Source: Octopus bimaculoides (Eukaryota). From it: a stretch of DNA of 64,000 nucleotides. The stretch covers positions 3,388,540 through 3,452,539 of the forward strand of contig NC_068994.1 of assembly GCF_001194135.2 (NCBI RefSeq), written 5' to 3'. A program made the position numbers and the translations under genes. Shown piece after piece: positions 4,279 through 53,649 of the stretch. Numbering within the stretch: position 1 is the stretch's first letter; every line of letters begins with the position of its first letter. The notes under the pieces were generated by a model. That model saw only the letters and a list, made by a program, of their open reading frames with translations, ran no database searches and was not told the DNA's origin.

Positions 4279-6702
4279 TCACTTCATGCAGTGGTTTTGT
4301 GCATCGATTGCACATTTTTGGGAAGTGTGCATTCCCTGAATGCTGGTCCAAGGACTTTGCCTGCCTTGCTTCATACTTCCGCATGGCAACGGGGCCGGTA
4401 CATTCGGCCAGTAAGAGGTTGTCATGGGCGGCATGGCGAAACTTCGCGACCACAGGTAATTATTTTCCCAGCTTTGTGGCATATCTTGTAGGTAAGGGGA
4501 AGTCATCCACGATGACGTCATTGCAGAAGCTTGTAGACGTGCCGAGGCACTGAGGGCCTGTGGGTCCCTTAGACGGTCTTTTAATATTCCAGTCCCTGAG
4601 CTGATGGACCCATCAATCAGTGATGAATTATGGAGAGGGCCATCAGGATCGGGGCTGCCACCAATACTACTGAGGTCAAGACTTGATTTCAAACCCCCAA
4701 TATTCCTTTGAAAGAGTTTATTGTCCCTGTTTGGATATGGTGATGTTAGTGCGGCTGGTGTCAATGGTGGTGACCCAACTGAAGATTTAATTGGTGTACT
4801 ACTGCCATTATTATTATTGTTATTATTATTATTATCGTTGTTGTTGTTACTTCTATCATTTGGTTTGTTCAGTGCAACTGCAGCAGCTGCTGGGGAGGTT
4901 AACGAGAACTTTGCTGTTAATTCCGCTGCTGTGTGTGTTCTCCGGTGATGATTGAGGTTTCCCCTCTGGGAAAATGCCTTTCCGCATACGTTGCATGAAA
5001 AAGGCTTCTCACCCGTATGTTTGCGCATGTGCGTCTTGAGATTTCCCTGTTGACTAAATGCCTTCTGGCACACTGTGCAGATGAATGGTTTCTCTCCGGT
5101 GTGCACCCGTTCGTGGTTCTTCAAACTGATCTGTAAAGTGAATGCTTTTGAGCACATTGTGCATTTGAACAGCTCTCCCGTGTGAGTTCGTCGATGGTTG
5201 TCAAGGTTGATTTTTTGGCAAAATGCCTTCCCACAGTCCATACAACTGTAAGGTTTCTCTCCAGTGTGGGTTCTCAAATGAATTTTCAGATTGCCCTGTT
5301 GACTAAATGCTTTTCCGCAAACTGCACAAACAAATGGTTTTTCTCCTGTATGCACTCGTTCGTGGTTTTTCCATTCTGTCTGTTGGCAGAAAGTGCGGTC
5401 ACAATATGCACAGTGGTACGGCTTTTGGCCTGTGTGAATGCGTTCATGGTTACGTAGATTTATTTGCTGGTAGAAAGCTTTTGAGCAAAACGAACACTTA
5501 AACAGATCTCCAGTGTGAATACGACGGTGATTATCTAAATTTATTTTTTGACAAAACGACTTACCACAAGTGTCGCAGTGATAGGGTTTTTCCCCGGTAT
5601 GAGTTCTTAAATGAGTTCTCAGATTTCCTTGTTGGCTAAACATTTTCGGACAGTAAGTACATTTAAAGGGCTTCTCGCCAGTGTGGACCCGTTCATGGTT
5701 GCGGAGATTAATTTGCAGAGAAAACGCTTTCGAGCAGAAGCGACAGTTGAACAAGTCTCCAGAATGGACACGCCGATGGTTGTCGAGGTTAGTTCTCTGG
5801 CTAAAAGATTTACCACAGGTTTCACAGTTGAAAGGTTTCTCTCCGGAATGTGTTCGTGCATGTATCTTCAAGTTCCCTTGTTGGCTAAAAGATTTTCCAC
5901 ACTCCAAACAAGTAAAAGGCCTTTCACCCGTATGGATCCGTCGGTGGTTTGCCAGATTGGTCCGCTGTGCAAATGCCTTTCCACAAATATCACAATTGAA
6001 TAATTTATCAGCTGACGTCAACCCTACTGAAGCTGCTCCTGCCGTATTGTCACAATGTGAACGACTAAGGTCTATGTCCTTTGTATCTTTTGGGATGCCT
6101 TGGCTGTGAAGATGAGAATGAGAAGAATAAAACGGAAATGCGGAACGACTGGAGAACATGGAGTTTGGATTGTTATTGTGGTCAGCCTCATTGTCAAAGT
6201 TACTGGTGAGGCCAAAAGAACGATCCATTGTTACTTGATCAAAGTTCTTGAAGTCAGAAGAATGTTGAAGTGGAAAAGCTCGACTGAAGAATGAAGTACT
6301 GAATGTCTTCTCTAAGTGTGTCATCTCATGAGCTTCCAGTTGGCTCCTTTGGGCGAAAAACTTTTTACAGAAGCCGCAGTAATACTGCTTGTCTTCTGTA
6401 GAGAGTCGTTCACCCCGGCTGTTGCATTGATGAAGATTGTTGCTGTTATTATTGTTGTTGTTACTACTGTTGTTGTTGTTGCTATTGTTATTGCTGTTGT
6501 CTTGGTGATGGAGGTGACTACTGCTGTTGTTCGATGTGACACGGCTTGAGAGGTTTTTTGTAAAGAAATCATAGCTGAACGGTTTCTCCATAGGAAGAGA
6601 CTTGTCATGGTATTTCACATGGCTGTTGGGGTAATAGGACTGACCATGCACCTCGAAATTGAACTGGTTCCCTGGAGTGTACATCGGCTGCACTGGATAC
6701 AT
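4279..6702 (-). CDS. C2H2 zinc-finger protein ZNF-A (807 aa; 1 isolated + 13 tandem fingers, two poly-Asn tracts, C-terminal Trp motif)
   Basis: Uninterrupted ORF with 14 CxxC-x12-HxxxH fingers and TGEKP-type linkers. Pyrimidine-rich acceptor (ttttgtAG, 6713-6712) 9 nt upstream of gcaccATG. The frame is open through the acceptor, so an upstream coding exon cannot be excluded. Confidence 0.93.
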
Positions 6703-23921: not shown

Positions 23922-24370
23922 CTATTTGCTCTGTCTCAAAGTACATGGGAAGACACTGGGGGAATTAGTCCAACCTGTGCCCCAGGTAGGGGACATGGCA
24001 GGGAAACCTCTGGCCCAGGAATAACTATTTTCCCAGTTCTGAAGGGTCTGGTGACTGCATGTCGATGGGATACTCAATGGCTGCAGGATCAAGGTGGGAG
24101 GGTTTGGCTGCTGAATACCAACACCACCACCACCGCCACCACCACCACCGCCNNNNNNNNNNNNNNNNNNNNNNNNNNNNNNNNNNNNNNNNNNNNNNNN
24201 NNNNNNNNNNNNNNNNNNNNNNNNNNNNNNNNNNNNNNNNNNNNNNNNNNNNNNNNNNNNNNNNNNNNNNNNNNNNNNNNNNNNNNNNNNNNNNNNNNNN
24301 NNNNNNCTGTGAAGCATGTGGGGTGGAAGATGGTGCAGGGGTTGGGTGTTGCTGTTGTTGCTGTTGTTGT

Positions 24371-24436
<66 letters not shown>

Positions 24437-25857
24437 TGCTGTTGTTGTTGCTGTGTTGGTGGCGGCGGTGCTAGGGGTGGTGGTTGTTGCTGGGCTGCTG
24501 CCGCAGGGGGTGTCTCTACCGGCTGAGATGAAGAATGCTCACAATGGCTGGTGTTCTTTGTGGAACCTGCTCGAGGAGTGTAGGTCTTCCTGTTGGTCTC
24601 CTGGTTGGCTGCGAATGGCTTCTCTCCAGATTCCTGTGACTCAGCGTGATGGTGGTGGTGATGGTAATGGTGATGGTGGTGGTGGTGGTTACAGAAGTTT
24701 TGATGTCGGTTTTGAATCTTTGGTTCATTGTTTCGTTTGGGGGTGACTTTGTGTGCAGAGCAGCAGGTTGGAACAATTGGCGAGGTGGCTTTGCAGCTAT
24801 GGACTAAACAGGTTGTAGCTGGAGCCGGCTGACAACATGGTGATGGAATCTTCTCACCTGTATGGGTTCGTTCATGAGTGTTCAGGTGAGCTCTTTGGCT
24901 AAATGATTTGTGACAATACACACAAGTGAATGGCTTCTCTCCGGTATGAGTTCTTTGGTGATTGTTCAAATGGTCGCGCTGACTAAATGCTTTCTTACAC
25001 ACATGACATTTGAATGGTTTTTCGCCGGTGTGAATGCGTTCATGAGTGTTGAGGTGGGCTTTCTGGCTAAACGACTTAAAGCACACGTCACAGTTGAATG
25101 GTTTCTCCCCTGTGTGAATCCGCTCATGGTTACGCAGGTAAGTTCTCTGACTAAAAGTTTTGTTACAGATGTAACAGCTGAATGCTTTCTCCCCTGTGTG
25201 GACCCTTTCATGATTCCTTAGATGTGCACGCTGACTGAAAGCTTTCAAACAGAACGTGCAGCTGAAGGGTTTCTCTCCCGTGTGGACACGTTGATGGTTA
25301 CTCAAGTGGTCCCTTTGAGCAAACGCTTTACAACACATGTGACATCGATAGGGTTTTTCTCCAGAGTGGACCCTCTCGTGGACTTTCAGGTGAATCTTTT
25401 GGCTGAAAGATTTTGGACAAGACTCACACTGGAATGGTTTCTCTCCTGTATGGATGCGTTCATGGCTCTTCAAGTGGGCTCGTTGACAAAATGCTTTGCA
25501 GCAGTACGCACAACTAAAGTGTTTGCCACCAGCAAATGCTACTTCATGATTGTTCAGATCTGCTCGTCTTGAGAAAGCCTTGCGACAAGTGTTGCACTTG
25601 TATGGCTTCTCCCCGTGTTTGTGATTATAATAAACCGGCTGCTCCATCACCACGGACTTACGATTATTTAAGCTCGAACCTTCCCTCGTTTCACTTGTGT
25701 CATCGCTGCTACCAGGAATGTTGCTGTTATTGTTATTACTGTTATTGTTGTTGTTGTTGTTGTTGCTGTTGTCATTGTTGTCTTGCAGATGTAGACCACA
25801 AGTATGATAGTTTGGTGGTGGCACCATTGTAGGATATATGGGTTGGTCGGAATACAT
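23922..25857 (-). CDS. C2H2 zinc-finger protein ZNF-B (1 degenerate + 8 intact fingers, poly-Asn, poly-His, Q35, poly-Gly); interrupted by N gap 24153-24306
   Basis: ORF from gcaccATG at 25857 with 8 canonical fingers. The gap is 154 N (not a multiple of 3). The paralog-conserved motif WENSYSWARGF...VFPC lies in the frame ending at TAG 23922-23924, not in the frame ending at 24025. Confidence 0.88.
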
Positions 25858-40157: not shown

Positions 40158-41726
40158 ATGTATTCTGTACAGTCTATGGCGTTTCCACAAGCTTTTCCTC
40201 AAAATGACTTGCATCACCACCATCATCATCATCACCACCAGCCACAACAGTTGAAAGTGAACTTGAAACAACCTGTCCCACAACAACAACAGCAACCACC
40301 ACCACAACCACAACAACCACCACCACCACCACCACCACAGCAACCACAACCAACACTACCACTTCAAACATCAACTATCATAGCTCAAGGAATTTCCAGC
40401 TCTGTCCCCGCTGTGTCTTCAGCCAACCATCAACATGTAAACAACAGCAGCAACAGTGCCACAAGTAAGAAACCATTCAAGTGTGACATCTGCCGGAAAG
40501 CCTTTTCTCGCAGAGCAAACTTGGACCATCATGAAAATGCCCCTGCGACAGAAAAGCATTTCAGTTGTGGCTATTGTTTCAAGGCGTTTTCACAGAGAGA
40601 CAAGTTGAAGAGTCACCAAGCTATTCACACGGGAGAGAGAAACTTCCACTGCGACATTTGCCAGAAGTCGTTCACGCAGAAAGATCACCTCAACAACCAC
40701 TCGCGGACACACAGTGGTCATCGGCCTTTTAAATGTCAGGTTTGCTCGAAGGCTTTTTCACAGCGGGCTCATTTGAAAAACCATCATCGCATACACACTG
40801 GCGAGAAGCCATTTCACTGCACCTTCTGTGGCAAAGGGTTTAGCCAAAGTGCACATCTTGCTAAGCACGAACGAGTGCATACTGGTCTCAGGCCATTCAG
40901 CTGTGCCTACTGTGGCAAATCATTTGCACAGCGCAGCAACTTGGACAACCACGAGCGCATCCACACTGGCTTGAAACCCTATCACTGTGGTGTGTGTTCC
41001 AAGTCTTTTGCTCAGCGAGATCATCTAAACAACCATGAACGTATTCACAGTGGTGAGAGACCATACAGGTGCACCACTTGCTCCAAGTCGTTTGCACAGC
41101 GTGCACATCTCAACAACCACAAGCGCATCCACAGCGGCGAGAAACCCTACACATGCTTGATCTGTCAGAAGTCATTCTCGCAGCGAGCTAATCTGAAAAA
41201 GCACGAACGCACACACACTTCGGAAGACATTCAGAAAGCATCATCATCACAGTCAACTGCAGAAAACACCACAGCCTCAGTTGTTGACATGAATTCAACA
41301 CCAGCACCAGCACCAGCTTCCACTACGCCTTCATCACAACAACAAACAGTTCACACTCTTAATGTGTCTCCTGCCTCTTCAGCTTCGTTAATGATGAGTG
41401 CATCACCTTGTTGTGCCTCATCGTTTTCCACACACCCTCAGGATCCCCATCTGCATCCCCATCAAGTGATGGTGCCAGACAGACTGTCAAACAGCTACTG
41501 TTGGTCTCGTGGCTTTCCTGTCACTGCCTGGAGTGATAGCCCTGCCGTGCCAACAGTCCCCGCCGGCAGTGTGTTTCCTTGCAATGGCGGCATTGTTGGA
41601 GTGCACAGTAGCGGTGTGGGGGTGGTGTGTAGTGCTGGAACTGGCTGCAACAGCCAACACCCAAATAAACATGGAATACAACTGGATCTCAATAAACCCA
41701 ATTCTCATCATAAAGGAAAGCATTAG
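40158..41726 (+). CDS. C2H2 zinc-finger protein ZNF-C (522 aa; 1 degenerate + 8 intact fingers, His/Gln/Pro-rich N-terminus, C-terminal Trp motif)
   Basis: Intact ORF starting gagccATG; finger block 40476-41216; candidate acceptor (ctcttcctgctcatccAG, 40134-40135) 22 nt upstream; AATAAA at 41861-41866. Confidence 0.93.
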   Translation: MYSVQSMAFPQAFPQNDLHHHHHHHHHQPQQLKVNLKQPVPQQQQQPPPQPQQPPPPPPPQQPQPTLPLQTSTIIAQGISSSVPAVSSANHQHVNNSSNSATSKKPFKCDICRKAFSRRANLDHHENAPATEKHFSCGYCFKAFSQRDKLKSHQAIHTGERNFHCDICQKSFTQKDHLNNHSRTHSGHRPFKCQVCSKAFSQRAHLKNHHRIHTGEKPFHCTFCGKGFSQSAHLAKHERVHTGLRPFSCAYCGKSFAQRSNLDNHERIHTGLKPYHCGVCSKSFAQRDHLNNHERIHSGERPYRCTTCSKSFAQRAHLNNHKRIHSGEKPYTCLICQKSFSQRANLKKHERTHTSEDIQKASSSQSTAENTTASVVDMNSTPAPAPASTTPSSQQQTVHTLNVSPASSASLMMSASPCCASSFSTHPQDPHLHPHQVMVPDRLSNSYCWSRGFPVTAWSDSPAVPTVPAGSVFPCNGGIVGVHSSGVGVVCSAGTGCNSQHPNKHGIQLDLNKPNSHHKGKH

Positions 41727-42755: not shown

Positions 42756-44299
42756 CTCAAATTAAAACTGGAAGAAGGGATTCTATTTTTGTTGTTTCAT
42801 TTAGTTACTGTTTATTTCTTACCATCCAACAGAAGTTCAATGCCCTAATTTGAGTCATCAGAATGGTTTTCAATTGAATTGATTTTGGATTTGATCACAA
42901 GGACTGTGCTTTGGCCAGGTTTGGGAGAGCAATCTGCATTCCATTCAGAATATTGTTCCATGTTCAAATTACTATTCATTGTAACCTCATACCATCCACC
43001 ATTATCTGATCTCACACCAATCACACCATCTATTATTTTCTGATCTCACATCTGTCATAACCATCCATCATTCTGTGACAACTTCCAATTCGCTGTCAGT
43101 GGCAGAGTTTGACATCCAGAGTTGTCGACCCTTAGTCATATCCTACAAAAACCTGGTCATCCTGGCACTTTGCATCCTCCTCTTTCACAAAGGGCCGGCT
43201 GCTCTTTTTGACCATTTATGGTAATCTGTTGGTTTCCACTTCACTTTTACCAGGTTTCCCATCTCAACTATAACCCTGTCACTTTTTCACCCACCTCATC
43301 AGTCATCATTCCAATGTGGTCATGTGATCCAGTCACTCACCTCACCACACAGGAAACCATTTTGGTGTTTTTGAAAGAAATCCTCTTTTCTTTCTCTTTC
43401 TAGCCCATGATCGTGCTTTCTTCCTCTTGTCATTTCTATTTGAACCTGAAACCACAGACATGGAGCAGGGATCCCTTATCTCCCTCATTCATCTTATTGT
43501 TCTTGAGATTGAGTTACAAAACTGTGTTGAGTGGGGACATCAACTCAACTTCCATTTTCAGTGGAATTATCAACTTTAATCTCCAGTCTCAAGTGGAATC
43601 CTAGTTTAACTCCAGATTTCAGTGACACAATGAGCTCAACTCCAAGCATAGCTGAGACATCAGTTTAACTCCGGACTATGTTAAATGGAATCTTCCAGCT
43701 TGACTCTAAATTAACACTTCGCTTGTCAGTCCCTTTTTTTTTTTCAAACACCCCTCTATGCCACATACTAAATAAAGAAAATGAAGACATTTATTTTTGC
43801 TGTTGACTCTTCATTTTGTTTTTGTTGTTGTGTATATAGATCTTATCACTGACCACTCATTTGTGAAGTAGGAGTGGACCCATTTTGTCAGCCAGGTAGT
43901 CTGAAGCCAGCAGATTATAGCCATAATAGTAACGTTTGAATTTTTCCCTATCAAAGTCTATCAGTAGTTCAGCCTCTTAACTCATTTGTTTCTGTATCTC
44001 TGTCAGAATACATTGACTTTAATTCAATGAATTTTGAAGAAAAATCTAGCAAAATAACTGTCTTTATTAAGCTGAATATTGTAACATAAATTAACGTGAA
44101 ATTCTGATGGAAAGTTTAAATTTAAATCACTTCAAGACAAGAAGTTTGTATCATAGAACCAGGAATGGGCTCAGGTAGATTGGTACAAAAAGGATAAAAT
44201 AACTTCTACTTTAACATTTAGATTACTCTGTCAAATGTAATGTTTATTTATTCACATTGGTTTATATTTAATTATGCAGCATGTAATTAATTAATTAAT

Positions 44300-44430
44300 G
44301 TAATTTAATTATGGTAGCATGTAAAAAGCACCATCCAATCGTGATCGATGCCAGCCCCTCTGGCATGTAAAAAGCAGCCACTGCACTCTCGGAGTGGTTG
44401 GCATTAGGAAGGGCATCCAGCTGTAGAATA
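44300..44430 (+). repeat. Partial copy of the (GAT)n-tailed dispersed module
   Basis: gcatgtaaaaagcacc..ggagtggttggcattaggaagggcatccagctgtagaa followed by (TA)n. Confidence 0.65.
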
Positions 44431-44454
44431 TATATATATATATATATGCGCACA

Positions 44455-45045
44455 TGTGTGGCTATGTGGTAAGAAGCTTGCTTTCCAACTATGTGGTTTG
44501 GGGTTCAATCCCACTGCATGGCATCTTGGGCAAGTGTCTTCTACAATAGCCCCTGGTTGACCAAAGACTTGAGTGAATTTTGTGGACAAAAGCTGAAAGA
44601 AGCTTGTTGTGTGTACATACATATGTACTTGCATGTGTGTGTGTATTTTTTTCTGTGTCCCTGCCTTGACTTTATGTGATAGTAGTAAATGAGTGTCACC
44701 ATTTTTCCAGTTGTCTTTCATCACCAGTCTTGTGTGGAAGCACGTCTGGCTGGATTAACCACTAAGCAAAATAAGCACATGCTCTATTTTATGGTTTGCT
44801 ATTGTTTATATTTTGAATTACATAATCTTTTATGGGGGCACCAAAATCTTTTAAGTGCTTAGGGCCTCGATGGGTCTTAATCCAGCCCTGACGTCTGGTC
44901 ATGAGGATATATTACCTTACTTGTAAAGGGCTGAGGGTTGGTAACAGGAAGAGCATCCAGCTGTAGAAAAAAACCTACCTGAACAAATTCTGTCCAACCC
45001 ATACAAGTATGGAAATGTAGATATTAAAACAATGATGATTATGCC
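44455..45045 (+). mobile_element. tRNA-derived SINE with internal (TG)n and (GAT)n-type tail, split by the MITE
   Basis: Head gctatgtggtaagaagcttgc..ggttcaatcccactgc (A/B-box-like); tail aggaagagcatccagctgtaga..ccaacccat..atgatgat shared with other copies. Confidence 0.7.
44750..44890. mobile_element. 141-bp MITE (hAT-like) nested in a SINE
   Basis: Flanked by 8-bp direct repeat ACGTCTGG (44742-44749 and 44891-44898); ends CTGGATTAA...TTAATCCAG(CCCTG) plus an inner CTAAGCA/TGCTTAG pair; removing it restores a continuous SINE tail. Confidence 0.65.
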
Positions 45046-46199
45046 ATGGTAGTCTAACATCACTACTTCAACCTATACTATGCTGTTCAATACACTATAC
45101 ACTCTGATCCATACCACTACCACCAATAAACACCTTCCTCTAAGCCATGAGGGTAGACTAAGGGCCAGCAACTTTCCCCCATTTACCAGTTATAAGATTA
45201 ACAGAGCCCACAGGGAAATTTGGTAAGTGCTGATGCATGAAACTCTCAGCCCTGGAATCATTTTGTTGCTTCTACTAAACATGAATAAAAAATATATATT
45301 TACTTATGTTTTGAGTTCTGTCTTCCTTGCTTACATTGCCAAACCTGTCCTTAGAAACCAATGAACACACTGGATGTAGCCAAACCATTGGACTGTACGT
45401 TTGAAAATGGCTAAAAAGAATTAGATGAAAACAAAAAATGGGTCACCTGTCACTTGTGAGTATGACCACACCTTTCCCTAATTGCTTTTAGGGGTCTATG
45501 TAGTTGTGAGATGTAGACAAACTCTCAGGCCTTCCATCCTTGCCCCTGTGGGACATTAAAGATGTGACAGCTGGAGGGAGAGAGATTTTGTCAAAAGATG
45601 TGCCTTACTCAAGGACACAATTTACTACCGGGTCTTAGAACTGAACCCATGACTTTATGATTTTAAACCACACACCTTCTCACAAACATGACTTACCACA
45701 GCTCCATAGATATATATTCGATAGGCTTCAACACAATTTCCATCAAGCAAATATCACTCAAGGCATTAGTCAACATAAGGCTACAATAGAAGATACTTGC
45801 TCAGTGATTGAGCTGGCGGAGTGAACTTAATAACGTTCTCCCTAAAAAAAAAAAAAAAGTCGGACATCAGATGAGTGGAATAATAGTCGTCAGTGTTGTA
45901 TTTATTGGAATTGTTTCTCTTGATGGTTTATCTTTCAGAAGTAAATAAGTCTCCAAAACCTATTGTGCTGTTTTTGTAAAGCAGCTGACTTGTTTCATTG
46001 AATAAAAACTCAGTATTGTTTAAAATTTTACGATAGCAGATAGGTTTTCATCTTAGAAGATATATTAGTCGAAAATGTTCACAGAAATAAAATAATGCTG
46101 TCTTACACCTACACAGTTTGAGTTGGATGAAACAAAAACAACAAATATGAGAAGATAAAGAGAAAACATCTGTCAGTAGTAAGTTTTTAACAATCAACT

Positions 46200-46520
46200 G
46201 AATGTTTGTAAACCATACAGCCATGACGTGTCTCGACAGCGTTGTTATCAGGTCACACGAACGCTGGAGCTTTGTGTTTTTTATGTCTTTTTAAATCGAT
46301 TGACAATGTCGTTGGCAGACGGGAGGGAGACTGCTGCACAACGGAGAAGTGAAAACTGAAGAGAAGAAAAGAATTAGTGCATTTTCCCTCCATTCATGTG
46401 TGTGTGTGTGTGTGTTTTTTTTAATGTGAAATAACTCACAAATCTCTAATTTAAAGGTTCTTTTTTCGTAGCTTTTTTGTTAATTAACTTTTGTTTTACG
46501 AGGCAGCCATTTTGTAAATC
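46200..46520. promoter_or_regulatory. Possible promoter region of the orphan ORF
   Basis: CpG-containing unique sequence with TGACGTG and a YY1-like GCAGCCATTTTG (46503-46514), 450-750 bp upstream of the ATG. Such motifs also occur by chance. Confidence 0.22.
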
Positions 46521-46722
46521 ATTTTGAAAAATGTCTCTAAATGAACTTCACTTTTTCAATCGTAAATTACCGTTATTTTTGTGAAGACCCCCACCCTACA
46601 AAAAAAAAACTTTTGTGCAGATAATCTATTTCAGCTTGAGACTCGACTTTTAAGATATCATTCAATGGAAAATTTCTCAATATAAGTAGACAATTCGAAA
46701 CAGATCCTACATAGATTTTCAG

Positions 46723-46761
<39 letters not shown>

Positions 46762-46962
46762 GAATTTCGAAGTGTTGCCAAAATCACCAGATCGGGAAAA
46801 TAAAAGAAATTACCTCTTTTAAAATGAAGGCAACAGTTTGTTTTAATTGTTATATCGTAGCATTACGGAAGAAAAAAGTTGGAATATAGACGTATAAGCA
46901 GAACCACGATTAAAATAAATATGAAGTGAGTACATTTTCATGTTACATTAGCCTAAGAAATC

Positions 46963-48000
46963 ATGAATTATATAAAGAATGTGACAGGAAACCGCTCTTT
47001 TTTAGGCTCCATGTCCACTTTGAACATTTTTCAGTCTAAAAAGAAAACATCATTTCAGGGCACAAGTCAACGATTTGTTGTGCCGAATCAGCCGATTGTA
47101 ACAAGACCGTATTCAAAATTACAACTGAAATCATTGGATTCTTTTCAGTGGGACGGTAACATTTACCAAATGAATCGAACTATTAAAAATAAAGCGAACA
47201 ATAGTTTATTGTCCTTAACTAGCATATTATGTTTCACTGAACACATGGAGAATACACCGTTGGATAACATGAGCATGTTGTTTCAATCAAACCAGCATTG
47301 TGCAAACAACAGACGAAACACACAGCCAGACGAAGACAATATTCTGTCGGGAATTTTCAATGAAGATGTTTCAAAGGCAACACAAATGGAGAAAAAAGAA
47401 AGAAAACCATTAAGATATTCGTCAGTCATTGCTTGTGAAAGGCTTCTATTAAAATATCCAGACAATTTGATGTATCTATTATTGCAAATGGTACTGACGC
47501 CAGAAATACATTGTCAGCCATTTCAAAACGAAAAGCACAGGAAATCATTATCTGAAGAGAACTTATTGGCAAAATTAGTTAAATGTAATCTGAATGAGTA
47601 TGTCGGTCGTGTTGTGATGTTTTCTCTGACTATAAAACATGAGAACGGTTTTTTTGATAAAAGTAACAATTGCAGAGACCTGGCAGGTGAGAAGCAACAC
47701 AAGAGAAATAATTCGCCATCTGGTGAAGCCAGATTGAAAGACACGGGTGACGACATTCAGAAAAGCCAGCCGCCAAACATTTTCACAAAGGAACAACGTG
47801 CAATGCTGATATATTACGTATTTTTCCAGTGTTTGACGTTTTCCCTGTATTATGTCCATCAAGTATTAGATCAGCTTGACACAGACACTGTAGCAATGAT
47901 GAAACCATTTTCATTGTACATCGTACAATTTTGTTTATTGTTGTTGTTTATCTACATTAAATGGTTATTTAAGTCTCCATCCTCTCTTAAGGACAGCTAA
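46963..48000 (+). CDS. Orphan 345-aa protein with two C-terminal hydrophobic (putative transmembrane) segments
   Basis: 1038-nt stop-free, non-repetitive ORF in AT-rich DNA; aaatcATG context; AG 11 nt upstream (46950-46951); hydrophobic runs AMLIYYVFFQCLTFSLYYV and FSLYIVQFCLLLLFIYIKWLF; AATAAA at 48036-48041. No family recognised. Confidence 0.65.
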   Translation: MNYIKNVTGNRSFLGSMSTLNIFQSKKKTSFQGTSQRFVVPNQPIVTRPYSKLQLKSLDSFQWDGNIYQMNRTIKNKANNSLLSLTSILCFTEHMENTPLDNMSMLFQSNQHCANNRRNTQPDEDNILSGIFNEDVSKATQMEKKERKPLRYSSVIACERLLLKYPDNLMYLLLQMVLTPEIHCQPFQNEKHRKSLSEENLLAKLVKCNLNEYVGRVVMFSLTIKHENGFFDKSNNCRDLAGEKQHKRNNSPSGEARLKDTGDDIQKSQPPNIFTKEQRAMLIYYVFFQCLTFSLYYVHQVLDQLDTDTVAMMKPFSLYIVQFCLLLLFIYIKWLFKSPSSLKDS

Positions 48001-48809
48001 CAAATTACATGTTTTTTTTTTTAAACGAGAGAAGGAATAAATGTATTTTTATACACTATATATTTATATATATATTACTATGACTTCTTTTCTATATATT
48101 GTCTTTAGAGAAATATTTTCACACAAGAGAAAATATTTTATAAATCTGTATTTAGTTTATAAAGATGAATTTAGCCATGATCCGGTTGACATCTTATCAG
48201 AAACGTTCCAGCAGTGACTATTCTATCACACTTGTTCACTCCACTTGCTGGAAATAGCAGCCAAATTTCATCACACCACGCTGTCTTAAAGGACAAGATG
48301 GGGGTAGTCACTGCTTTTGGACAACTTACACCCTACATAATAAACCAATGCACTTCAGTGTACAGTGTGATCTTCATTTCCGGCAGGGATACAATATATC
48401 CAGAATACTGGATCCACAGATCGCATCTTATAGTCATTCACTATTTGTTCTAGTATCATTCTTAAAGGACTGGCCCCTTCTTCACTTGTATTTCATTCAT
48501 AAAATATCCCACATCCTAAAATCATCTCTGACCCCTCACTCTTTTACTTTCTTTCTTGAGAGTTATAAATCCCTCAAGACTAGCTTCAAAATGATGTCGT
48601 AAACCCATTAACACTGTTCCATTTAGATTTTGCTGGGCTGCCATTTTAAACCACTTCATCTCTGCTTCATTCAAATTAGTATTATCAGCCAGTTGATATC
48701 AATTTTATCAAATACACGGAGGTAAAGTGGCTGAGTTCAGAGACAATGAATGAGACCTTTAACATTATGTCATACTTGAGAAGAAGACCTATGAAGCCAA
48801 ACAAAATCA

Positions 48810-48980
48810 GTCATGGCACATAAAAGCACCCATCACACTCTCAGAATGGTTGGCATAAGGAAGGGCATCCAGCCATAGAAAACCCTGCCAAATCAGACTG
48901 GAGTCTGGTGCAGCTTACCAGCCATGGTCAAATCGTCCAACCCGTGCCAGCATGGACAATGGATGTTAAATGATGATGAA
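48810..48980 (+). repeat. Copy of the (GAT)n-tailed dispersed module
   Basis: ggttggcataaggaagggcatccagccatagaaa..ccaacccgtgccagcatgg..gttaaatgatgatga. Confidence 0.7.
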
Positions 48981-49422
48981 GACAACCTTAACATACATAC
49001 TTATGTACTGTATCTCGGGAGGGTCATTATGCCAATAATAAATATATGCACTGGTCCTATTTCACTTCTTTTATTATTTAGTCAATTACTTAACCAATCA
49101 ACTGACTGACTGTCTTATTAAGTGTTTGGTCAATCAATCAATCAGCTAGGTCAATCATTTCCTTGCTACCTGCAACTTCATTAATGATAAGGCTTCTCTA
49201 TTGCAGATTTACTTGACTATCCTGAGATATAAAAAAATATATTTTAACACACGAGTTCAGATCAAAAACATTGCAAATGAAATAGAAAAACAATTATATG
49301 CAAATATATATATATTCCCATGCAAAACAGAAACAAGTACCAAGAGTTCCATGTGGCATGCTTGAATAATTGTGAAGATCACTTCACATGAAACTACTGG
49401 TTGCTTTGTTGATCCACAAACA

Positions 49423-49467
<45 letters not shown>

Positions 49468-51633
49468 NNNNNNNNNNNNNNNNNNNNNNNNNNNNNNNNN
49501 NNNNNNNNNNNNNNNNNNNNNNNNNNNNNNNNNNNNNNNNNNNNNNNNNNNNNNNNNNNNNNNNNNNNNNNNNNNNNNNNNNNNNNNNNNTTCTTAGTTT
49601 TTTTTAATGATGGTTAGATACATAGACAGATAGAGAGTGAGAGTTGGGCAGGTGTTGTAACCCTCTTGAAATGAAGCAAACAACAGTGATTATGAGCTGG
49701 GAGAAGAGGGGGAAAAATATCATATATATATATATATATAAATCAGGGACATACCACCAAGGTTGGCAGTGCCTACCTTGAATAAAATAGAACGATAGCA
49801 ACATTTTCCTTTTATGGCAAAATATGCACCTAATTCAATAAAATTATGAAGGTTACTCTGATTACTCTGCATAAAATGCAAAATATTTTATTTTTTTGTA
49901 GATTAGGTAGGCATAATTCGCCCTTGCTTTTCAATCTCGGTATTTAAGCTACGCATAGTACTGCTGTAGTACACACGCTGCATACACTCCTACAACACCG
50001 TTTTCTTTGCATGCTATAAAGGCAGAATTAAATTTGCCTTCAACTCAGACACATGTCTGTTTCTCTTATTTTTTGTGTTTTACTACATAAAGGTCACCAA
50101 CTGCCTACCCTGAGTAATTACTGATGGCACGTGCCTGATATATATGAGACACTCCACACAACATAATAAATAAATTAAAAAAAAACATAATATGTAAGAT
50201 AGACATGGACCCTTACAATGTTTAAGGGCAAGGGAACGTTTTGGTGAAGTTGTGGAGAGCATTGGTGGTAATTAGTTTCAGTGCAGATTGAAACCATGAT
50301 TGCGAGTTCACACAAAACCCAAACAGTGCCAAATTCTTGTAGATTGTAATTTTGTTCAATAAATGAAAAAGTTGGGGTGAGAGTGATGGTTAATGACACA
50401 TTATTATAAATTTCCAGTGAAGACATGTTGATCCATAAACAAGGACATATTGACTGAAACTGGACACAAACATTGATCACTCCTTACACAGGGAACATCA
50501 TTTCCAGGGATATATTCAAATGAAAGAGGAGAGGGGGAAAAAACCCGTAAGTTGCCAGTTTTTTTCTCTTTAGTTTTACAATTGAAATGTACCTTTTTTT
50601 GTTTTTCATTGATACAGGCACCAATGTCAGAGATGTGAAAATCTCTTTTCCTTGTCCGAAACAATGTCACATACAAGTATATCCATTTTGTTTTCTTTTT
50701 GTCTTCCTTCTGCAGCAGTATCATATAGAAATGAACCCTGCTTCTCACATGTACAACTATTATAAACAGTTGTACTTCCTTTACACACACACATATCTAT
50801 CTATACATACATCATTTAATATACACAAAATTTTAAAAGAGCTACTAACAGTTTCATGCTGTTGAGCTACAATAATTTCCCAGATTATTGTATCTGTACG
50901 GTACGAAACTATTGGTATCTCTTTTTAAAATTCTGTCTATGTTAAATGATATTCATTTCTCACTGGATGGAATCCTTCTTTTGTTGATCCTACCTGTAAT
51001 GGAACAGTAAACTATATTTACATATATGTATGTATGTGTGTATAAATATATAAAAGAATGTAGACTTTCTTATGTGTTAAGTGACCTTTCTGGTTTTAAA
51101 AATATCAATGTCGTTCTGATGTAGCTTGGCAAGCACAGCTACCAATATCACACACACACACACACACACGGTCACCACTTAATGTTCACTCTGCTTGCTC
51201 CTTTCTCTGCATAGCAACCGTTGTGGTATCCCAAACACATCTTGCTTTACACAAATTCCATTGTTTCCAGATGTATCTCATAGAAAGATGTCATTAAAAG
51301 ACATTATTATTATTATTATTATTATCAGTCCTAGCAATGAAACGAATGTACTTTGAAGAAATACTGTTTATCACATTCCAAGGTACTTATTAACTGCAAA
51401 CATCCATGCACCTTTTTCTGTCAGTTTAGTAATTCTCTCTGTAAACACTGATGAGGTACTGCACGGTACCACACAAGAGTCAATGCTAAAGAACAACTGC
51501 CGTGCCTGTTTCTCTGTCTTAAATGCCCGGTGGAGGCTTCACTATTTAGAGTGGAGAGAGGGAAAGAGAGAGAAAGAGAGAGAACGAGAACATTAGAGAG
51601 TTAAATCACATTCAAGACAAAGAGTTGTCTCCC

Positions 51634-52701
51634 TTATATGTTCATATAGTGCGTCACCCCTTCGTGCTGTGGTATATCCGTGGTATGATGTGCTTGAGAT
51701 ACACTGAGGGTCGCTTGGTAAGTTTCTGAAGTTGCTGCAGCAGTGTTCTGTGGGACACAACTCAGTTTACGGTCGCCAAGTTTATTGGTTCGCTGGTGTC
51801 GCTCCAGATGGTCTTTACGAGAAAAGGCAAAGCCGCAAATGTTACATTTGAAGGGTCTCTCGCCCGTGTGCGTCCGTTTGTGGACAGTGAGGTGGTATTT
51901 CTGGGAGAACGACTTGGTACACATATCACAGCAGAATATCTTCTCGTTGGTGTGGGCCTTTTTGTGTCTCTCTAGATAGCTGTTCTCTGAGAACGCCTTC
52001 CCACAAACGTCACACTTGTAGGGAAGCAAGGCAGCATGAATTCGCTCATGCATATCTGCATCGGACCTTTCTGTGAAGGCTTTCCAGCAGGCTTTACAGT
52101 TGAATGGATTATCGTCTTGGTAGTTAGCAGGCACCTGTGGTTGGGGTTGAGGCGGCGGCGGCGGTGGAGGCGGTGGTGGTGGTGGTGGCGGCTGTGGCTT
52201 CTGATAGGTAGTGCTCTGGTTCTGGAATAGAGATTCTTCGTGTGTCTTAAAATGGCGAGTTAGATCTCCATTTCTTCCGAAAGCACAGCCGCAAATATTA
52301 CATTTATATGGTTTGTCAACAGCAAAAGATCTTGCAGTGTTTGGGTTGGGATTCTCATACTGGGGGGCCATCGAAGGCATGGTCCCCTGCCCATGGGTTT
52401 TCATGTGACGAGTCAGATTACCATTTCTTGAGAAACAGAAACCACAAATGTTGCACTTGAAAGGTTTCTCGCCAGTGTGTATGGTCTGGTGCTGTTTCAG
52501 GTGTGATTTATGAGAGAACGATTTTCCGCAAACATCACAACCAAATGGTTTGACAGCCTGATGGGTGAGTTTATGCCTCTCCAGGTTGTCAAACCGTGAG
52601 AAACCTTTACCACAGATATCGCAGCTATGACTTGTCTCGATGGCATGAATCACTTCAGTTAGTTCGTAACCTGGAATGTTGGAGGTGATGATGTGATTCA
52701 T
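51634..52701 (-). CDS. C2H2 zinc-finger protein ZNF-D (355 aa from first ATG; 7 intact fingers + 1 lacking the second His; poly-Pro spacer)
   Basis: The ORF track starts at a non-ATG codon at 52743 inside the polypyrimidine tract. Strong acceptor (ttttttgtttgtcttttgtAG, 52728-52727) then acaccATG at 52701. The frame is open across the acceptor, so an upstream coding exon is possible. Confidence 0.9.
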   Translation of the reverse strand: MNHIITSNIPGYELTEVIHAIETSHSCDICGKGFSRFDNLERHKLTHQAVKPFGCDVCGKSFSHKSHLKQHQTIHTGEKPFKCNICGFCFSRNGNLTRHMKTHGQGTMPSMAPQYENPNPNTARSFAVDKPYKCNICGCAFGRNGDLTRHFKTHEESLFQNQSTTYQKPQPPPPPPPPPPPPPPQPQPQVPANYQDDNPFNCKACWKAFTERSDADMHERIHAALLPYKCDVCGKAFSENSYLERHKKAHTNEKIFCCDMCTKSFSQKYHLTVHKRTHTGERPFKCNICGFAFSRKDHLERHQRTNKLGDRKLSCVPQNTAAATSETYQATLSVSQAHHTTDIPQHEGVTHYMNI

Positions 52702-53649
52702 GGTGTCGTCTCTTCTGGCACCAATGCTACAAAAGACAAACAAAAAAAAAAAACAAGCAGTTAGGATTTTGAAAAAACATCCAGTGTATATGTGTGTGAA
52801 TGTGATGTGGTAGGGTTAATTTGTTGACCTGTGGAAGATTGTTGCATATCCTAGATAAAGCAGTTGAGATCATGTGTGACCACAGACATCATGAATATGA
52901 TTAGGACATCAGGGTGAAAGACCAAGATTAGATCTCAACAGACTGGACATCACAGATGAAATAACAGATCAACACATGTATTGATATGCTGATTCTATGC
53001 GGAATACCTAGTCAACCCACATCATTTCTGAAAAACACAGAGTAGACTAAAAGTGAGAACTTCGTTAAGGGTACACGTATCTGTGGAGTGTTCAGCCACT
53101 TGCACGTTAACAGGAAAGACTGATTTAGTAGAAACAGGTGATGGATATGAAAGATGACTGCTCTATCTAACAGGATGAATAACCATGCAAACATTCTCTC
53201 AATAGTTCCTATCTGAGGAATTAAGATAGGAATTATGATTTTAAGCAGTTTCCTCTATGATTCCTGATTATATCTTATACTGGTCAACAGGAATTGCAAC
53301 TGGATACATATGTCTTGGTCACGGATACAGTACAGTAAACTGTATCATACTGTGGTATCTACTTACGGCTAAGTAAACTGAGCTATAGACAGAAACATGT
53401 CCTTGTCATGGCCACAGGGAAATGAACTCAACACTGTTGGCAATACAGATGTTTTGGATAATGAACTCAGTGTTTCAAATCCACCTCAAATAAAGTGAAA
53501 GTGTCAATGTATGAAAGGGCTGCAGGTTTGTCACAGTTGGAATCTGATCCTCATCTTCAATTTCATGTTGAGAACCAGATTATCACCTGGATAAGGCACA
53601 AGTCTATCACACATTACTTTCCTTAGCTAAACTTCAGACAATAAGATGA

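What the first reader, a model, noticed from the sequence alone, without database searches (positions are those of the whole stretch)
46963..48000. Orphan intronless 345-aa membrane-anchored ORF embedded in the zinc-finger cluster
Seen: a 345-codon ORF with no repeats and no transposon motif I recognise, an A at -3, a nearby upstream AG, a downstream AATAAA, and a predicted soluble N-terminal region followed by two hydrophobic segments (about 47800-47856 and 47908-47970) joined by an acidic loop and ending in a short polar tail. A rough estimate assuming about 35% GC (stop probability about 0.07 per codon) makes such an ORF very unlikely by chance. Inference: a taxon-restricted gene for a hairpin-anchored ER/organelle membrane protein, lying between ZNF-C and the convergent ZNF-D.
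Basis: partly seen in the sequence, partly recalled or inferred. Interest (0 to 1): 0.72.

Follow-up and report, generated by a model that had tools for sequence, protein, structure and literature searches.

The report
Octopus-only orphan gene, predicted membrane-anchored protein
The 345-codon reading frame is a real single-copy gene found so far only in Octopus species: it has no recognisable relatives, it probably encodes a protein held in a membrane by its tail end, and it is already predicted but uncharacterised in two sister species, so it is a modest rather than surprising find.

Summary
ORF 46963-48000 (+) has 345 codons, A at -3, a conserved AATAAA at 48036-48041, no internal repeats, and two C-terminal hydrophobic segments at the stated coordinates. 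It lies between two Pfam-confirmed C2H2 zinc-finger genes.

It is an orphan. There was no hit in Pfam, PDB or IMG/VR, and an exhaustive HMMER profile search of 1.84 billion representatives found only its own cluster.

Intact syntenic orthologues exist in O. sinensis (XP_036365256.1, "uncharacterized protein LOC118766096", 345 aa) and O. vulgaris (CAI9733402.1). A third, unidentified octopod also has one (four Logan assemblies).

The frame is maintained:
- There are no stops over about 116 substitutions (P about 0.006).
- The ORF has only in-frame indels (6 and 21 nt), whereas equally conserved flanks carry 9-16 indels.
- O. vulgaris and O. sinensis differ by 6 synonymous and 0 non-synonymous changes.

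Amino-acid constraint is weak overall (omega 0.4-1.1). In the window's own lineage it cannot be told from neutral (4 syn : 17 non). The gene appears unannotated in the window's genome.

AlphaFold failed (pLDDT 32), so the tail- or hairpin-anchored topology rests on hydropathy alone. Expression could not be tested.

Verdict: a real, ordinary taxon-restricted gene of low-to-moderate interest.

The parts
46963..48000 (+). Coding sequence of the orphan gene (345 codons plus TAA), in one uninterrupted exon
   Evidence: Intact orthologous ORFs of 343-345 and 338 codons in O. vulgaris, O. sinensis and species X. The O. sinensis RefSeq model is one contiguous CDS.
47011..47013 (+). Alternative start codon (Met17), used by the O. 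vulgaris gene model (327 aa)
   Evidence: P0001 starts at MSTLN although the upstream ATG is intact in O. vulgaris. Its Kozak context is weaker (T at -3) than that of Met1 (A at -3), read.
46926..47005 (+). Candidate 80-nt 5' intron: donor AA|GTGAGT (46926-46931), acceptor CTCTTTTTTAG|G (AG at 47004-47005). It would remove Met1. Inferred only.
   Evidence: Sequence read. The stretch is almost invariant in four species and is consistent with the O. vulgaris Met17 model. There is no transcript evidence, and the species-X contigs retain it.
47800..47856 (+). Hydrophobic segment 1 (aa 280-298, AMLIYYVFFQCLTFSLYYV), aromatic-rich. Marginal transmembrane or interfacial helix.
   Evidence: Kyte-Doolittle 1.51 in the window and 1.17-1.27 in orthologues.
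47857..47907 (+). Acidic connecting loop (aa 299-315, HQVLDQLDTDTVAMMKP)
   Evidence: Acidic character is kept in all species (D/E swaps only).
47908..47970 (+). Hydrophobic segment 2 (aa 316-336, FSLYIVQFCLLLLFIYIKWLF), a strong transmembrane helix ending 9 residues before the C-terminus
   Evidence: Kyte-Doolittle 2.13 in the window and 1.93-2.03 in orthologues. Wimley-White sum is -15 to -16.
47971..47997 (+). Short basic/polar C-terminal tail (KSPSSLKDS)
   Evidence: Identical in the window, O. vulgaris and O. sinensis; S to N at the last residue in species X.
48036..48041 (+). AATAAA polyadenylation-signal candidate, 36 nt after the stop
   Evidence: Present in all four species at the same relative place.
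46200..46962 (+). Conserved upstream block (candidate promoter / 5' UTR). Contains an almost invariant stretch at 46290-46390, a CRE-like TGACGTG (46224-46230) and a TATA-like ATATAAG (46680-46686).
   Evidence: Substitution identity is 96% to O. vulgaris and 91% to species X, as high as the ORF, against 90-93% / 82-84% in the outer flanks. It carries many out-of-frame indels, so it is non-coding.

Best explanation
This is a genuine, single-copy protein-coding gene restricted, as far as current data show, to Octopus. It is the orthologue of O. sinensis LOC118766096 and O. vulgaris CAI9733402.1. No model for it from the window's own genome is in the protein collection.

Shown:
- The reading frame has been kept open and in frame in at least four species.
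- It sits in conserved synteny inside a C2H2 zinc-finger cluster.
- It has a conserved upstream block and a conserved AATAAA.
- It has no detectable homologue anywhere else.

Inferred:
- The product is about 40 kDa (345 aa, or 329 aa if Met17 is the start).
- It has no signal peptide and a polar, net-basic N-terminal part of about 279 residues that stays in the cytosol.
- It has a C-terminal membrane anchor made of a strong transmembrane helix (316-336) nine residues from the end. This is preceded by a weaker aromatic-rich helix (280-298) and a 17-residue acidic loop.
- The anchor leaves the ribosome only at termination, so insertion must be post-translational, by a tail-anchor type route (GET/TRC40, EMC or direct insertion into the mitochondrial outer membrane).
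- Positive charges on both outer sides (K276/R279; K333/K337/K343) and the acidic loop favour a hairpin, with both ends cytosolic and the loop on the far side.
- The protein would then act as a membrane-tethered adaptor that displays its N-terminal part on the cytosolic face of an organelle.

It evolves fast. Selection keeps the frame but constrains individual residues only weakly, and unevenly among lineages.
For: Chance is excluded locally: 1.5e-5 such ORFs are expected per window, and 0 of 20000 shuffles stayed open.

Orthologues with the same start and stop are intact in O. vulgaris, O. sinensis and species X. Synteny with the flanking ZNF genes is kept.

Frame maintenance:
- About 116 substitutions on the tree produced no stop, where 5.1 stop-creating changes are expected (P = 0.006).
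- The ORF (1038 nt) has only two indels, of 6 and 21 nt. The equally conserved 763-nt upstream block has 9-16 indels and the 200-nt downstream block has 3-4, mostly not multiples of three.
- O. vulgaris versus O. sinensis shows 6 synonymous and 0 non-synonymous changes (binomial p = 9e-5). Their aligned stretch containing the ORF (L001 7775-15473) shows about 1.7% mismatches overall.
- The O. vulgaris/sinensis lineage in total shows 19 syn: 14 non (p = 3.5e-4).

Orphan status: no hit in Pfam, PDB or IMG/VR, and the exhaustive profile search found only its own cluster.

Single copy: one contig per assembly and no paralogue.

Anchor: hydropathy is conserved in all species, and helices 276-304 and 307-336 appear in the (low-confidence) model.

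Two independent annotation pipelines call the gene.
Against: - Substitutions are spread evenly over the three codon positions (14/17/17 and 34/26/24). ML/YN00 omega is 0.5-1.4.
- For the three deeper pairwise comparisons (window, O. vulgaris, species X) the synonymous fraction does not differ from neutral (p = 0.08-0.75).
- The window's own lineage has 4 syn: 17 non, so constraint in this species is not demonstrated.
- All four polymorphisms among species-X contigs are non-synonymous.
- Base composition at all three codon positions equals the non-coding background.
- The non-coding flanks are as conserved as the ORF at substitution level.
- AlphaFold gives pLDDT 31.9, so there is no confident fold.
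- Segment 1 is below the usual Kyte-Doolittle threshold.
- No expression evidence could be obtained. The Logan contigs cannot be assigned to RNA or DNA.
- No protein from the window's own genome matches the ORF in the collection, although that genome's annotation is in it.
Confidence: 0.65

Rival explanations
1. The stretch is a conserved non-coding or merely transcribed element (long UTR, lncRNA, regulatory block) in which a long ORF happens to be open. Alternatively, it is a gene that has lost its function in the window's lineage and has not yet been hit by a stop.
For: - Substitutions are evenly spread over codon positions, and omega is near 1 on two of three branches.
- The window lineage has 4 syn: 17 non.
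- Non-coding flanks are equally conserved.
- Codon-position composition equals the background.
- About 0.6 such ORFs are expected per genome by chance.
- No confident fold was obtained.
- No model from the window's own genome is in the collection.
Against: - No stop occurs in any of four species (P = 0.006).
- Indels are purged from the ORF and are in-frame only, while the flanks carry many.
- O. vulgaris versus O. sinensis shows 6 syn: 0 non, and that lineage shows 19:14.
- Hydrophobic character of both C-terminal segments is preserved through the substitutions.
- For the window lineage alone the data have no power: about 1 stop and about 1.4 non-microsatellite indels are expected, so recent loss of function there cannot be excluded.
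Confidence: 0.15
2. The ORF is not a stand-alone intronless gene. It is the last exon of a spliced gene: either a non-coding 5' exon joined at the acceptor at 47005, so that the protein starts at Met17, or an undetected upstream coding exon.
For: - A consensus-like donor (46926) and a strong polypyrimidine acceptor (47004-47005) lie in a stretch that is invariant in four species.
- The O. vulgaris model starts at Met17 although Met1 is intact.
- The upstream block 46200-46962 is conserved.
Against: - The O. sinensis RefSeq model uses Met1 and one contiguous CDS.
- Met1 has the better Kozak context.
- Neither annotation has an upstream coding exon.
- Upstream indels are out of frame, so there is no coding exon within 760 nt.
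- The species-X contigs keep the putative intron.
Confidence: 0.2
3. The ORF is a domesticated or decaying gene of a transposon or virus that landed in the transposon-rich zinc-finger cluster.
For: - The coding sequence is intronless and has no cellular homologues.
- SINE-like dispersed repeats flank the region, at 44370-44428 and 48822-48980.
Against: - There is no transposase, integrase, RT, capsid or any other Pfam domain.
- There is no hit in IMG/VR.
- No other copy exists in 1.84 billion representatives, and there is one contig per assembly.
- No terminal inverted or long terminal repeats bound the ORF. The flanking repeats are short dispersed elements that also occur elsewhere in the orthologous O. 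vulgaris locus.
- Position and synteny are fixed in three species.
Confidence: 0.04

Closest known systems
Octopus sinensis LOC118766096 (XP_036365256.1, 'uncharacterized protein', 345 aa) and Octopus vulgaris CAI9733402.1 / A0AA36FDB3 ('hypothetical predicted protein', 327 aa)
   Same: These are orthologues, 90-91% identical over the full length. They share the start, the stop, the C-terminal anchor and the position between the same two zinc-finger genes.
   Different: The window copy comes from another Octopus species. The O. vulgaris comparison shows about 5% nucleotide divergence in the ORF and about 7-10% in the outer flanks; O. sinensis gives a similar ORF figure (51 differences in 1035 nt). 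It carries 17 lineage-specific amino-acid changes against 4 synonymous ones, and no model for it from the window's genome is in the collection. None of the orthologues has any experimental characterisation or literature.
Tail-anchored membrane proteins (a functional class, e.g. Sec61-beta, cytochrome b5, Bcl-2, Fis1; own knowledge)
   Same: There is no signal peptide, the bulk of the protein is N-terminal and polar, and a strong hydrophobic helix ends 9 residues before the C-terminus and is flanked by lysines.
   Different: There is no sequence relationship to any of them. A second hydrophobic helix lies 17 residues upstream, so the anchor may be a two-helix hairpin rather than a single span. 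The insertion pathway and target organelle are unknown.
C-terminal hairpin anchors with both ends cytosolic (e.g. syntaxin 17, atlastin, TMCC proteins, reticulon-type wedges; own knowledge)
   Same: Two hydrophobic helices are joined by a short loop close to the C-terminus. The charge distribution favours cytosolic ends.
   Different: There is no Pfam match to reticulon, TMCC or any other family, even for the C-terminal 87 residues alone at E up to 1. The first helix is only marginally hydrophobic on Kyte-Doolittle.
Lineage-specific ('novel') octopod genes described in octopod genome papers (PMC7656900)
   Same: It is restricted to octopods, lacks Pfam domains and evolves fast. Such genes are reported as numerous in octopod genomes.
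   Different: No expression data were available here, so it cannot be placed among the neural or reproductive novel-gene sets of that paper.

Membership tests
Taxon-restricted (orphan) protein-coding gene | No detectable homologue outside the taxon | tested here: met
   Pfam gave 0 families at E<=10. PDB gave only chance hits. The word-indexed search of 5.8 billion proteins found 2 Octopus clusters. The exhaustive HMMER profile search of 1.84 billion representatives found only its own cluster. IMG/VR gave none. Un-annotated cephalopod genomes could not be searched at DNA level.
Taxon-restricted (orphan) protein-coding gene | Reading frame maintained by selection in related species | tested here: met
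   No stops (P = 0.006), in-frame indels only, and 6 syn: 0 non between O. vulgaris and O. sinensis. However, omega is about 1 on the window and species-X branches.
Taxon-restricted (orphan) protein-coding gene | Transcribed and translated | not testable with these tools
   No RNA-seq or proteome access. The Logan contigs are of unknown library type. The only indirect evidence is the two gene models.
Tail-anchored membrane protein (class) | No N-terminal signal peptide or earlier transmembrane segment | tested here: met
   The maximum Kyte-Doolittle 19-residue mean in residues 1-270 is 1.0, and the N-terminus is polar. A weak hydrophobic patch at 161-187 contains P, D and K.
Tail-anchored membrane protein (class) | A single transmembrane helix within about 30-50 residues of the C-terminus | tested here: inconclusive
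   Helix 316-336 qualifies (KD 2.13, 9-residue tail). A second candidate helix at 280-298 (KD 1.17-1.51, Wimley-White -11 to -13) may also span.
Tail-anchored membrane protein (class) | Post-translational insertion by GET/TRC40, EMC or a mitochondrial route | not testable with these tools
   Inferred only from the position of the anchor.
Reticulon / TMCC / other named hairpin-anchor families | Sequence match to the family profile | tested here: not met
   No Pfam family for the whole protein or for the C-terminal 87 residues. The best hits were YdjM at E = 0.095 and Strabismus at E = 0.39, both far below their cut-offs.
Transposon- or virus-encoded ORF | Recognisable mobile-element or viral domain, multiple copies, terminal repeats | tested here: not met
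   No domain, single copy, no bounding LTR/TIR, no viral contig match.
Processed retrogene | A multi-exon parental paralogue in the same genome | tested here: not met
   No paralogue in the O. sinensis or O. vulgaris proteomes or anywhere else.
C2H2 zinc-finger gene of the surrounding cluster | zf-C2H2 repeats | tested here: not met
   The neighbours score 1e-40 to 2e-44 for PF00096, while the ORF scores nothing.

The most novel reading that the evidence does not exclude
The gene arose de novo from AT-rich intergenic DNA of the zinc-finger cluster in an Octopus ancestor. At 345 codons it is then an unusually long de novo gene caught at an early stage: the frame and the hydrophobic tail are under selection while most residues still drift.

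The following fit this reading:
- Base composition at all three codon positions equals the non-coding background.
- Omega is about 1 on two of three branches, with clear purifying selection only in the O. vulgaris/sinensis lineage.
- No confident fold was obtained.
- There is no homologue in 15 billion proteins.
- Roughly one random open frame of this length is expected per genome.

The alternative, an old gene diverged beyond recognition or simply unannotated in other cephalopods, is not excluded.
Probability: 0.2. Interest if true: 0.55.

Novelty: new member of a known kind. Interest (0 to 1): 0.25.

Why it matters
There are three points of practical value:
- It flags a probable annotation gap. 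The window's genome has annotated proteins in the collection (its 807-aa zinc-finger protein is there), yet no model for this ORF, while two sister species have one.
- It gives a clean, single-copy example of an Octopus-restricted gene. Its frame is selected while its residues are barely constrained, and the selective regime differs between lineages. That makes it a usable case for studying how lineage-specific genes arise and settle in cephalopods.
- If the tail-anchor prediction holds, it would be an Octopus-specific component of an organelle surface.

None of this is surprising to a specialist. Octopod genomes are reported to hold many lineage-specific genes (PMC7656900), and nothing points to a new mechanism.

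Tried and rejected
- **Pfam, whole protein at E<=10**: nothing.
- **Pfam, N-terminal 276 aa and C-terminal 87 aa separately at E<=1**: nothing for the N-terminal part; only sub-threshold chance hits for the C-terminal part.
- **PDB by sequence and by profile**: only chance hits (E 0.2-0.5).
- **Exhaustive HMMER profile search**: only the query's own cluster.
- **IMG/VR scan**: no relative.
- **Rfam on 44000-50000**: no RNA family.
- **AlphaFold2 with the 3-sequence alignment**: mean pLDDT 31.9, pTM 0.23. I did not run fold search, because a model of that quality gives meaningless matches, and I left the second structure job unused for the same reason.
- **Literature**: no paper mentions LOC118766096 or the four SRA runs, so species X and its library type remain unknown.
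- **Expression from the Logan contigs:** they are collinear with the genome over 3.0-3.3 kb and all start at the same base. They end at a dispersed repeat or a poly-C run, which fits either DNA or unspliced RNA, so I drew no conclusion.
- **Editing-like A/G bias among the contigs:** the 14 differences are of mixed types, so I dropped this.
- **FFAT-like GFFDKSN motif:** it is not conserved in species X (GSFDKSN), so I rejected it (read).
- **First simulation script**: it timed out and was replaced.
- **NG86 omega (0.41-0.70)** looked like clear purifying selection. It did not survive methods that correct for transition bias or the direct neutral expectation.
Full report
**1. The observation**

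The window holds an ATG-to-TAA open reading frame of 345 codons at 46963-48000 on the + strand. Reading the sequence confirms the following:
- an A at -3 (46960);
- an AG at 46950-46951;
- an AATAAA at 48036-48041.

TRF finds no tandem repeat inside the ORF, and tblastn finds no second copy in the window.

- Residues 280-298 (47800-47856) have a Kyte-Doolittle mean of 1.51.
- Residues 316-336 (47908-47970) have a mean of 2.13.
- The loop between them is HQVLDQLDTDTVAMMKP, and the tail after them is KSPSSLKDS.

The other five frames of the same stretch carry 14-26 stops. The local stop frequency is 0.056. About 1.5e-5 open stretches of this length are expected in the window, and none of 20000 shuffles stays open.

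The same arithmetic gives about 0.6 such stretches per 2.7-Gb genome. In a genome-wide scan, length alone therefore does not prove a gene.

**2. Surroundings**

The neighbours are C2H2 zinc-finger genes by Pfam:
- 40158-41726 (+) scores 1e-40 for PF00096.
- 51634-52743 (-), probably starting at the ATG at 52704, scores 2e-44.

**3. Relatives**

The word-indexed search of 5.8 billion proteins returned two clusters:
- P0001, from O. vulgaris, 'hypothetical predicted protein', 327 aa, 90% identical.
- P0002, 338 aa, 81% identical, from a Logan assembly.

The cluster listing adds XP_036365256.1, 'uncharacterized protein LOC118766096' of O. sinensis, 345 aa.

The loci show the same synteny:
- In O. 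vulgaris (L001, OX597827.1) a gene product of 520 aa lies upstream and one of 336 aa lies downstream on the opposite strand.
- In O. sinensis (L003, CM016872.1) the corresponding products are 522 and 356 aa.
- In O. sinensis the CDS is one contiguous block of 1038 nt.

The third species ('X') is represented by contigs of 3.0-3.3 kb from four runs, SRR11869384, 385, 390 and 391. I could not identify the species or the library type.

An exhaustive HMMER profile search of 1.84 billion representatives found only the query's own cluster. Pfam, PDB, IMG/VR and Rfam gave nothing. The gene is therefore an orphan, restricted to Octopus as far as annotated proteins go.

**4. Is the frame maintained?**

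The upstream ATG and the first 16 codons are identical in all species. The shorter O. vulgaris model simply starts at Met17. All orthologous frames are free of stops.

About 116 substitutions on the tree should have been accompanied by about 5.1 stop-creating ones, which gives P(none) = 0.006.

The indel pattern is the strongest evidence:
- The ORF has one 6-nt and one 21-nt indel.
- The 763 nt upstream have the same substitution identity but carry 9-16 indels per pair.
- The 200 nt downstream carry 3-4.
- Setting aside the indels in microsatellites and homopolymers, about 4 (O. vulgaris) and 8-9 (species X) remain in the upstream block (my count).
- That predicts about 5 and about 12 in the ORF, against one in-frame indel each.

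The closest pair, O. vulgaris and O. sinensis, differs by six synonymous and no non-synonymous changes (p = 9e-5). The aligned stretch around and including the ORF shows about 1.7% mismatches between these two species.

**5. How strong is the constraint?**

It is weak and uneven.
- NG86 gives omega of 0.41-0.70.
- Methods that allow for transition bias give 0.5-1.4.
- Substitutions are spread evenly over codon positions: 14/17/17 and 34/26/24.
- For the three deeper pairwise comparisons (window, O. vulgaris, species X) the synonymous fraction is not different from the neutral expectation.

Polarising changes with species X as outgroup gives the following counts:

| Branch | Synonymous | Non-synonymous |
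|---|---|---|
| Window lineage | 4 | 17 |
| O. vulgaris/sinensis stem | 13 | 14 |
| O. vulgaris/sinensis including their split | 19 | 14 |
| Species X plus stem | 16 | 44 |

The 19:14 count differs from neutral at p = 3.5e-4. The window lineage differs from the O. vulgaris/sinensis lineage by Fisher's test at p = 0.01.

So the gene is clearly under purifying selection in O. vulgaris/sinensis, and its frame is clearly kept in species X. In the window's own lineage the data cannot distinguish weak selection from neutrality: only about one stop and about 1.4 indels would be expected there.

Two further points:
- Base composition at all three codon positions equals the non-coding background, unlike the zinc-finger genes.
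- The whole block 46200-48200 evolves at about 0.5-0.7 times the rate of the outer flanks in every lineage.

**6. Gene structure**

The coding sequence is uninterrupted. Upstream, AA|GTGAGT (46926-46931) is a consensus-like donor and CTCTTTTTTAG|G (AG at 47004-47005) is a strong acceptor. The 80-nt interval would remove Met1 and leave Met17 (47011) as the start, which is what the O. vulgaris model uses. The stretch is nearly invariant in four species.

Against this, Met1 has the better start context and RefSeq uses it. This remains a lead only.

Other conserved signals:
- The AATAAA is conserved.
- A nearly invariant stretch lies at 46290-46390.
- A CRE-like TGACGTG lies at 46224-46230, and a TATA-like ATATAAG at 46680-46686.
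- These are candidate promoter or 5'-UTR elements.

**7. What the protein is likely to be**

There is no signal peptide. The N-terminal 279 residues are polar and net basic. The only strongly hydrophobic stretches are the two C-terminal ones, and they are conserved as hydrophobic in all species through I/V, F/L and C/G swaps.

AlphaFold2 with the shallow alignment gave pLDDT 31.9. It shows helices 276-304 and 307-336 but nothing that can be trusted, so I did not run a fold search.

From established knowledge of tail-anchored proteins, an anchor that ends nine residues before the stop codon can only be inserted after translation. Lys/Arg residues on the outer sides and an acidic loop favour cytosolic termini. 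I therefore commit to a C-terminally anchored protein facing the cytosol, either hairpin or single span, on the ER or another organelle, acting as a tethered adaptor. The organelle and the partners are unknown.

**8. Comparison with what is known**

The closest known entities are its own uncharacterised orthologues in O. sinensis and O. vulgaris.

By architecture it resembles tail-anchored proteins and C-terminal hairpin anchors, but it is not a sequence member of any named family. The transposon, viral, retrogene and zinc-finger readings each fail a defining test (see the membership table).

The window's 807-aa zinc-finger protein is in the collection with hidden identifiers, on a 60.6-Mb contig. 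So the window's genome annotation is present there, while no protein from it matches this ORF. The gene therefore seems unannotated in the window's species. From my own knowledge that species is probably O. bimaculoides; I did not test this.

**9. Verdict**

This is a real gene and a real orphan, but an ordinary one. Octopod genomes are reported to contain many lineage-specific genes (PMC7656900).

The most novel reading that is not excluded is de novo birth of an unusually long gene from the AT-rich spacer of the zinc-finger cluster. The tools here could not test it.

Noticed in passing
window 46963-48000 compared with L001, L003, L002: The selective regime differs between lineages. The window lineage has 4 synonymous : 17 non-synonymous changes, and the O. 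vulgaris/sinensis lineage has 19 : 14 (Fisher p = 0.01). All four polymorphisms among the species-X contigs are non-synonymous.
   Followed up: partly
window 46200-46962, especially 46224-46230, 46290-46390 and 46680-46686: The upstream non-coding block is as conserved as the ORF. It has an almost invariant 100-nt stretch, a CRE-like TGACGTG and a TATA-like ATATAAG. These are a candidate promoter or 5' UTR of the orphan gene.
   Followed up: partly
window ~48487 versus L001 11477-16683 (also present in L003): About 5.2 kb, partly internally repetitive, is present about 490 nt downstream of the stop in O. vulgaris and O. sinensis but absent from the window. This is either an insertion in that lineage or a deletion or assembly collapse in the window's species.
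   Followed up: no
window 44370-44428, 44936-44968, 48822-48980: These are copies of a short dispersed (SINE-like) repeat that also occurs several times, in both orientations, in the O. vulgaris locus. The longer species-X contigs end about where the 48822 copy begins, by coordinate extrapolation.
   Followed up: partly
window 4279-6702 (-): The 807-aa C2H2 zinc-finger protein of the window is in the protein collection with hidden identifiers (a 60.6-Mb contig; sources include EukProt and MetaClust). Its O. sinensis and O. vulgaris orthologues are named 'zinc finger protein 271-like'. This shows that the window's genome is annotated there, while no model for the orphan ORF is held.
   Followed up: yes
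window 40158-41723 (+) and 51637-52704 (-): The exact single-ORF translations of the two flanking zinc-finger genes are not in the collection. The source annotation may therefore model them differently (other start or splicing) or not at all.
   Followed up: no
window 18.4-19.3 kb, 24.1-24.3 kb, ~49468-49590 and others: Runs of N (assembly gaps) often sit next to (TA)n, (TG)n or CAG-type microsatellites. One gap interrupts the poly-Gln tract of the zinc-finger ORF at 24025-25857.
   Followed up: no
window 46728-46757 and 46397-46415: The (TA)15 and (TG)9 microsatellites upstream of the ORF vary in length among the Octopus species. They account for several of the flank indels.
   Followed up: yes
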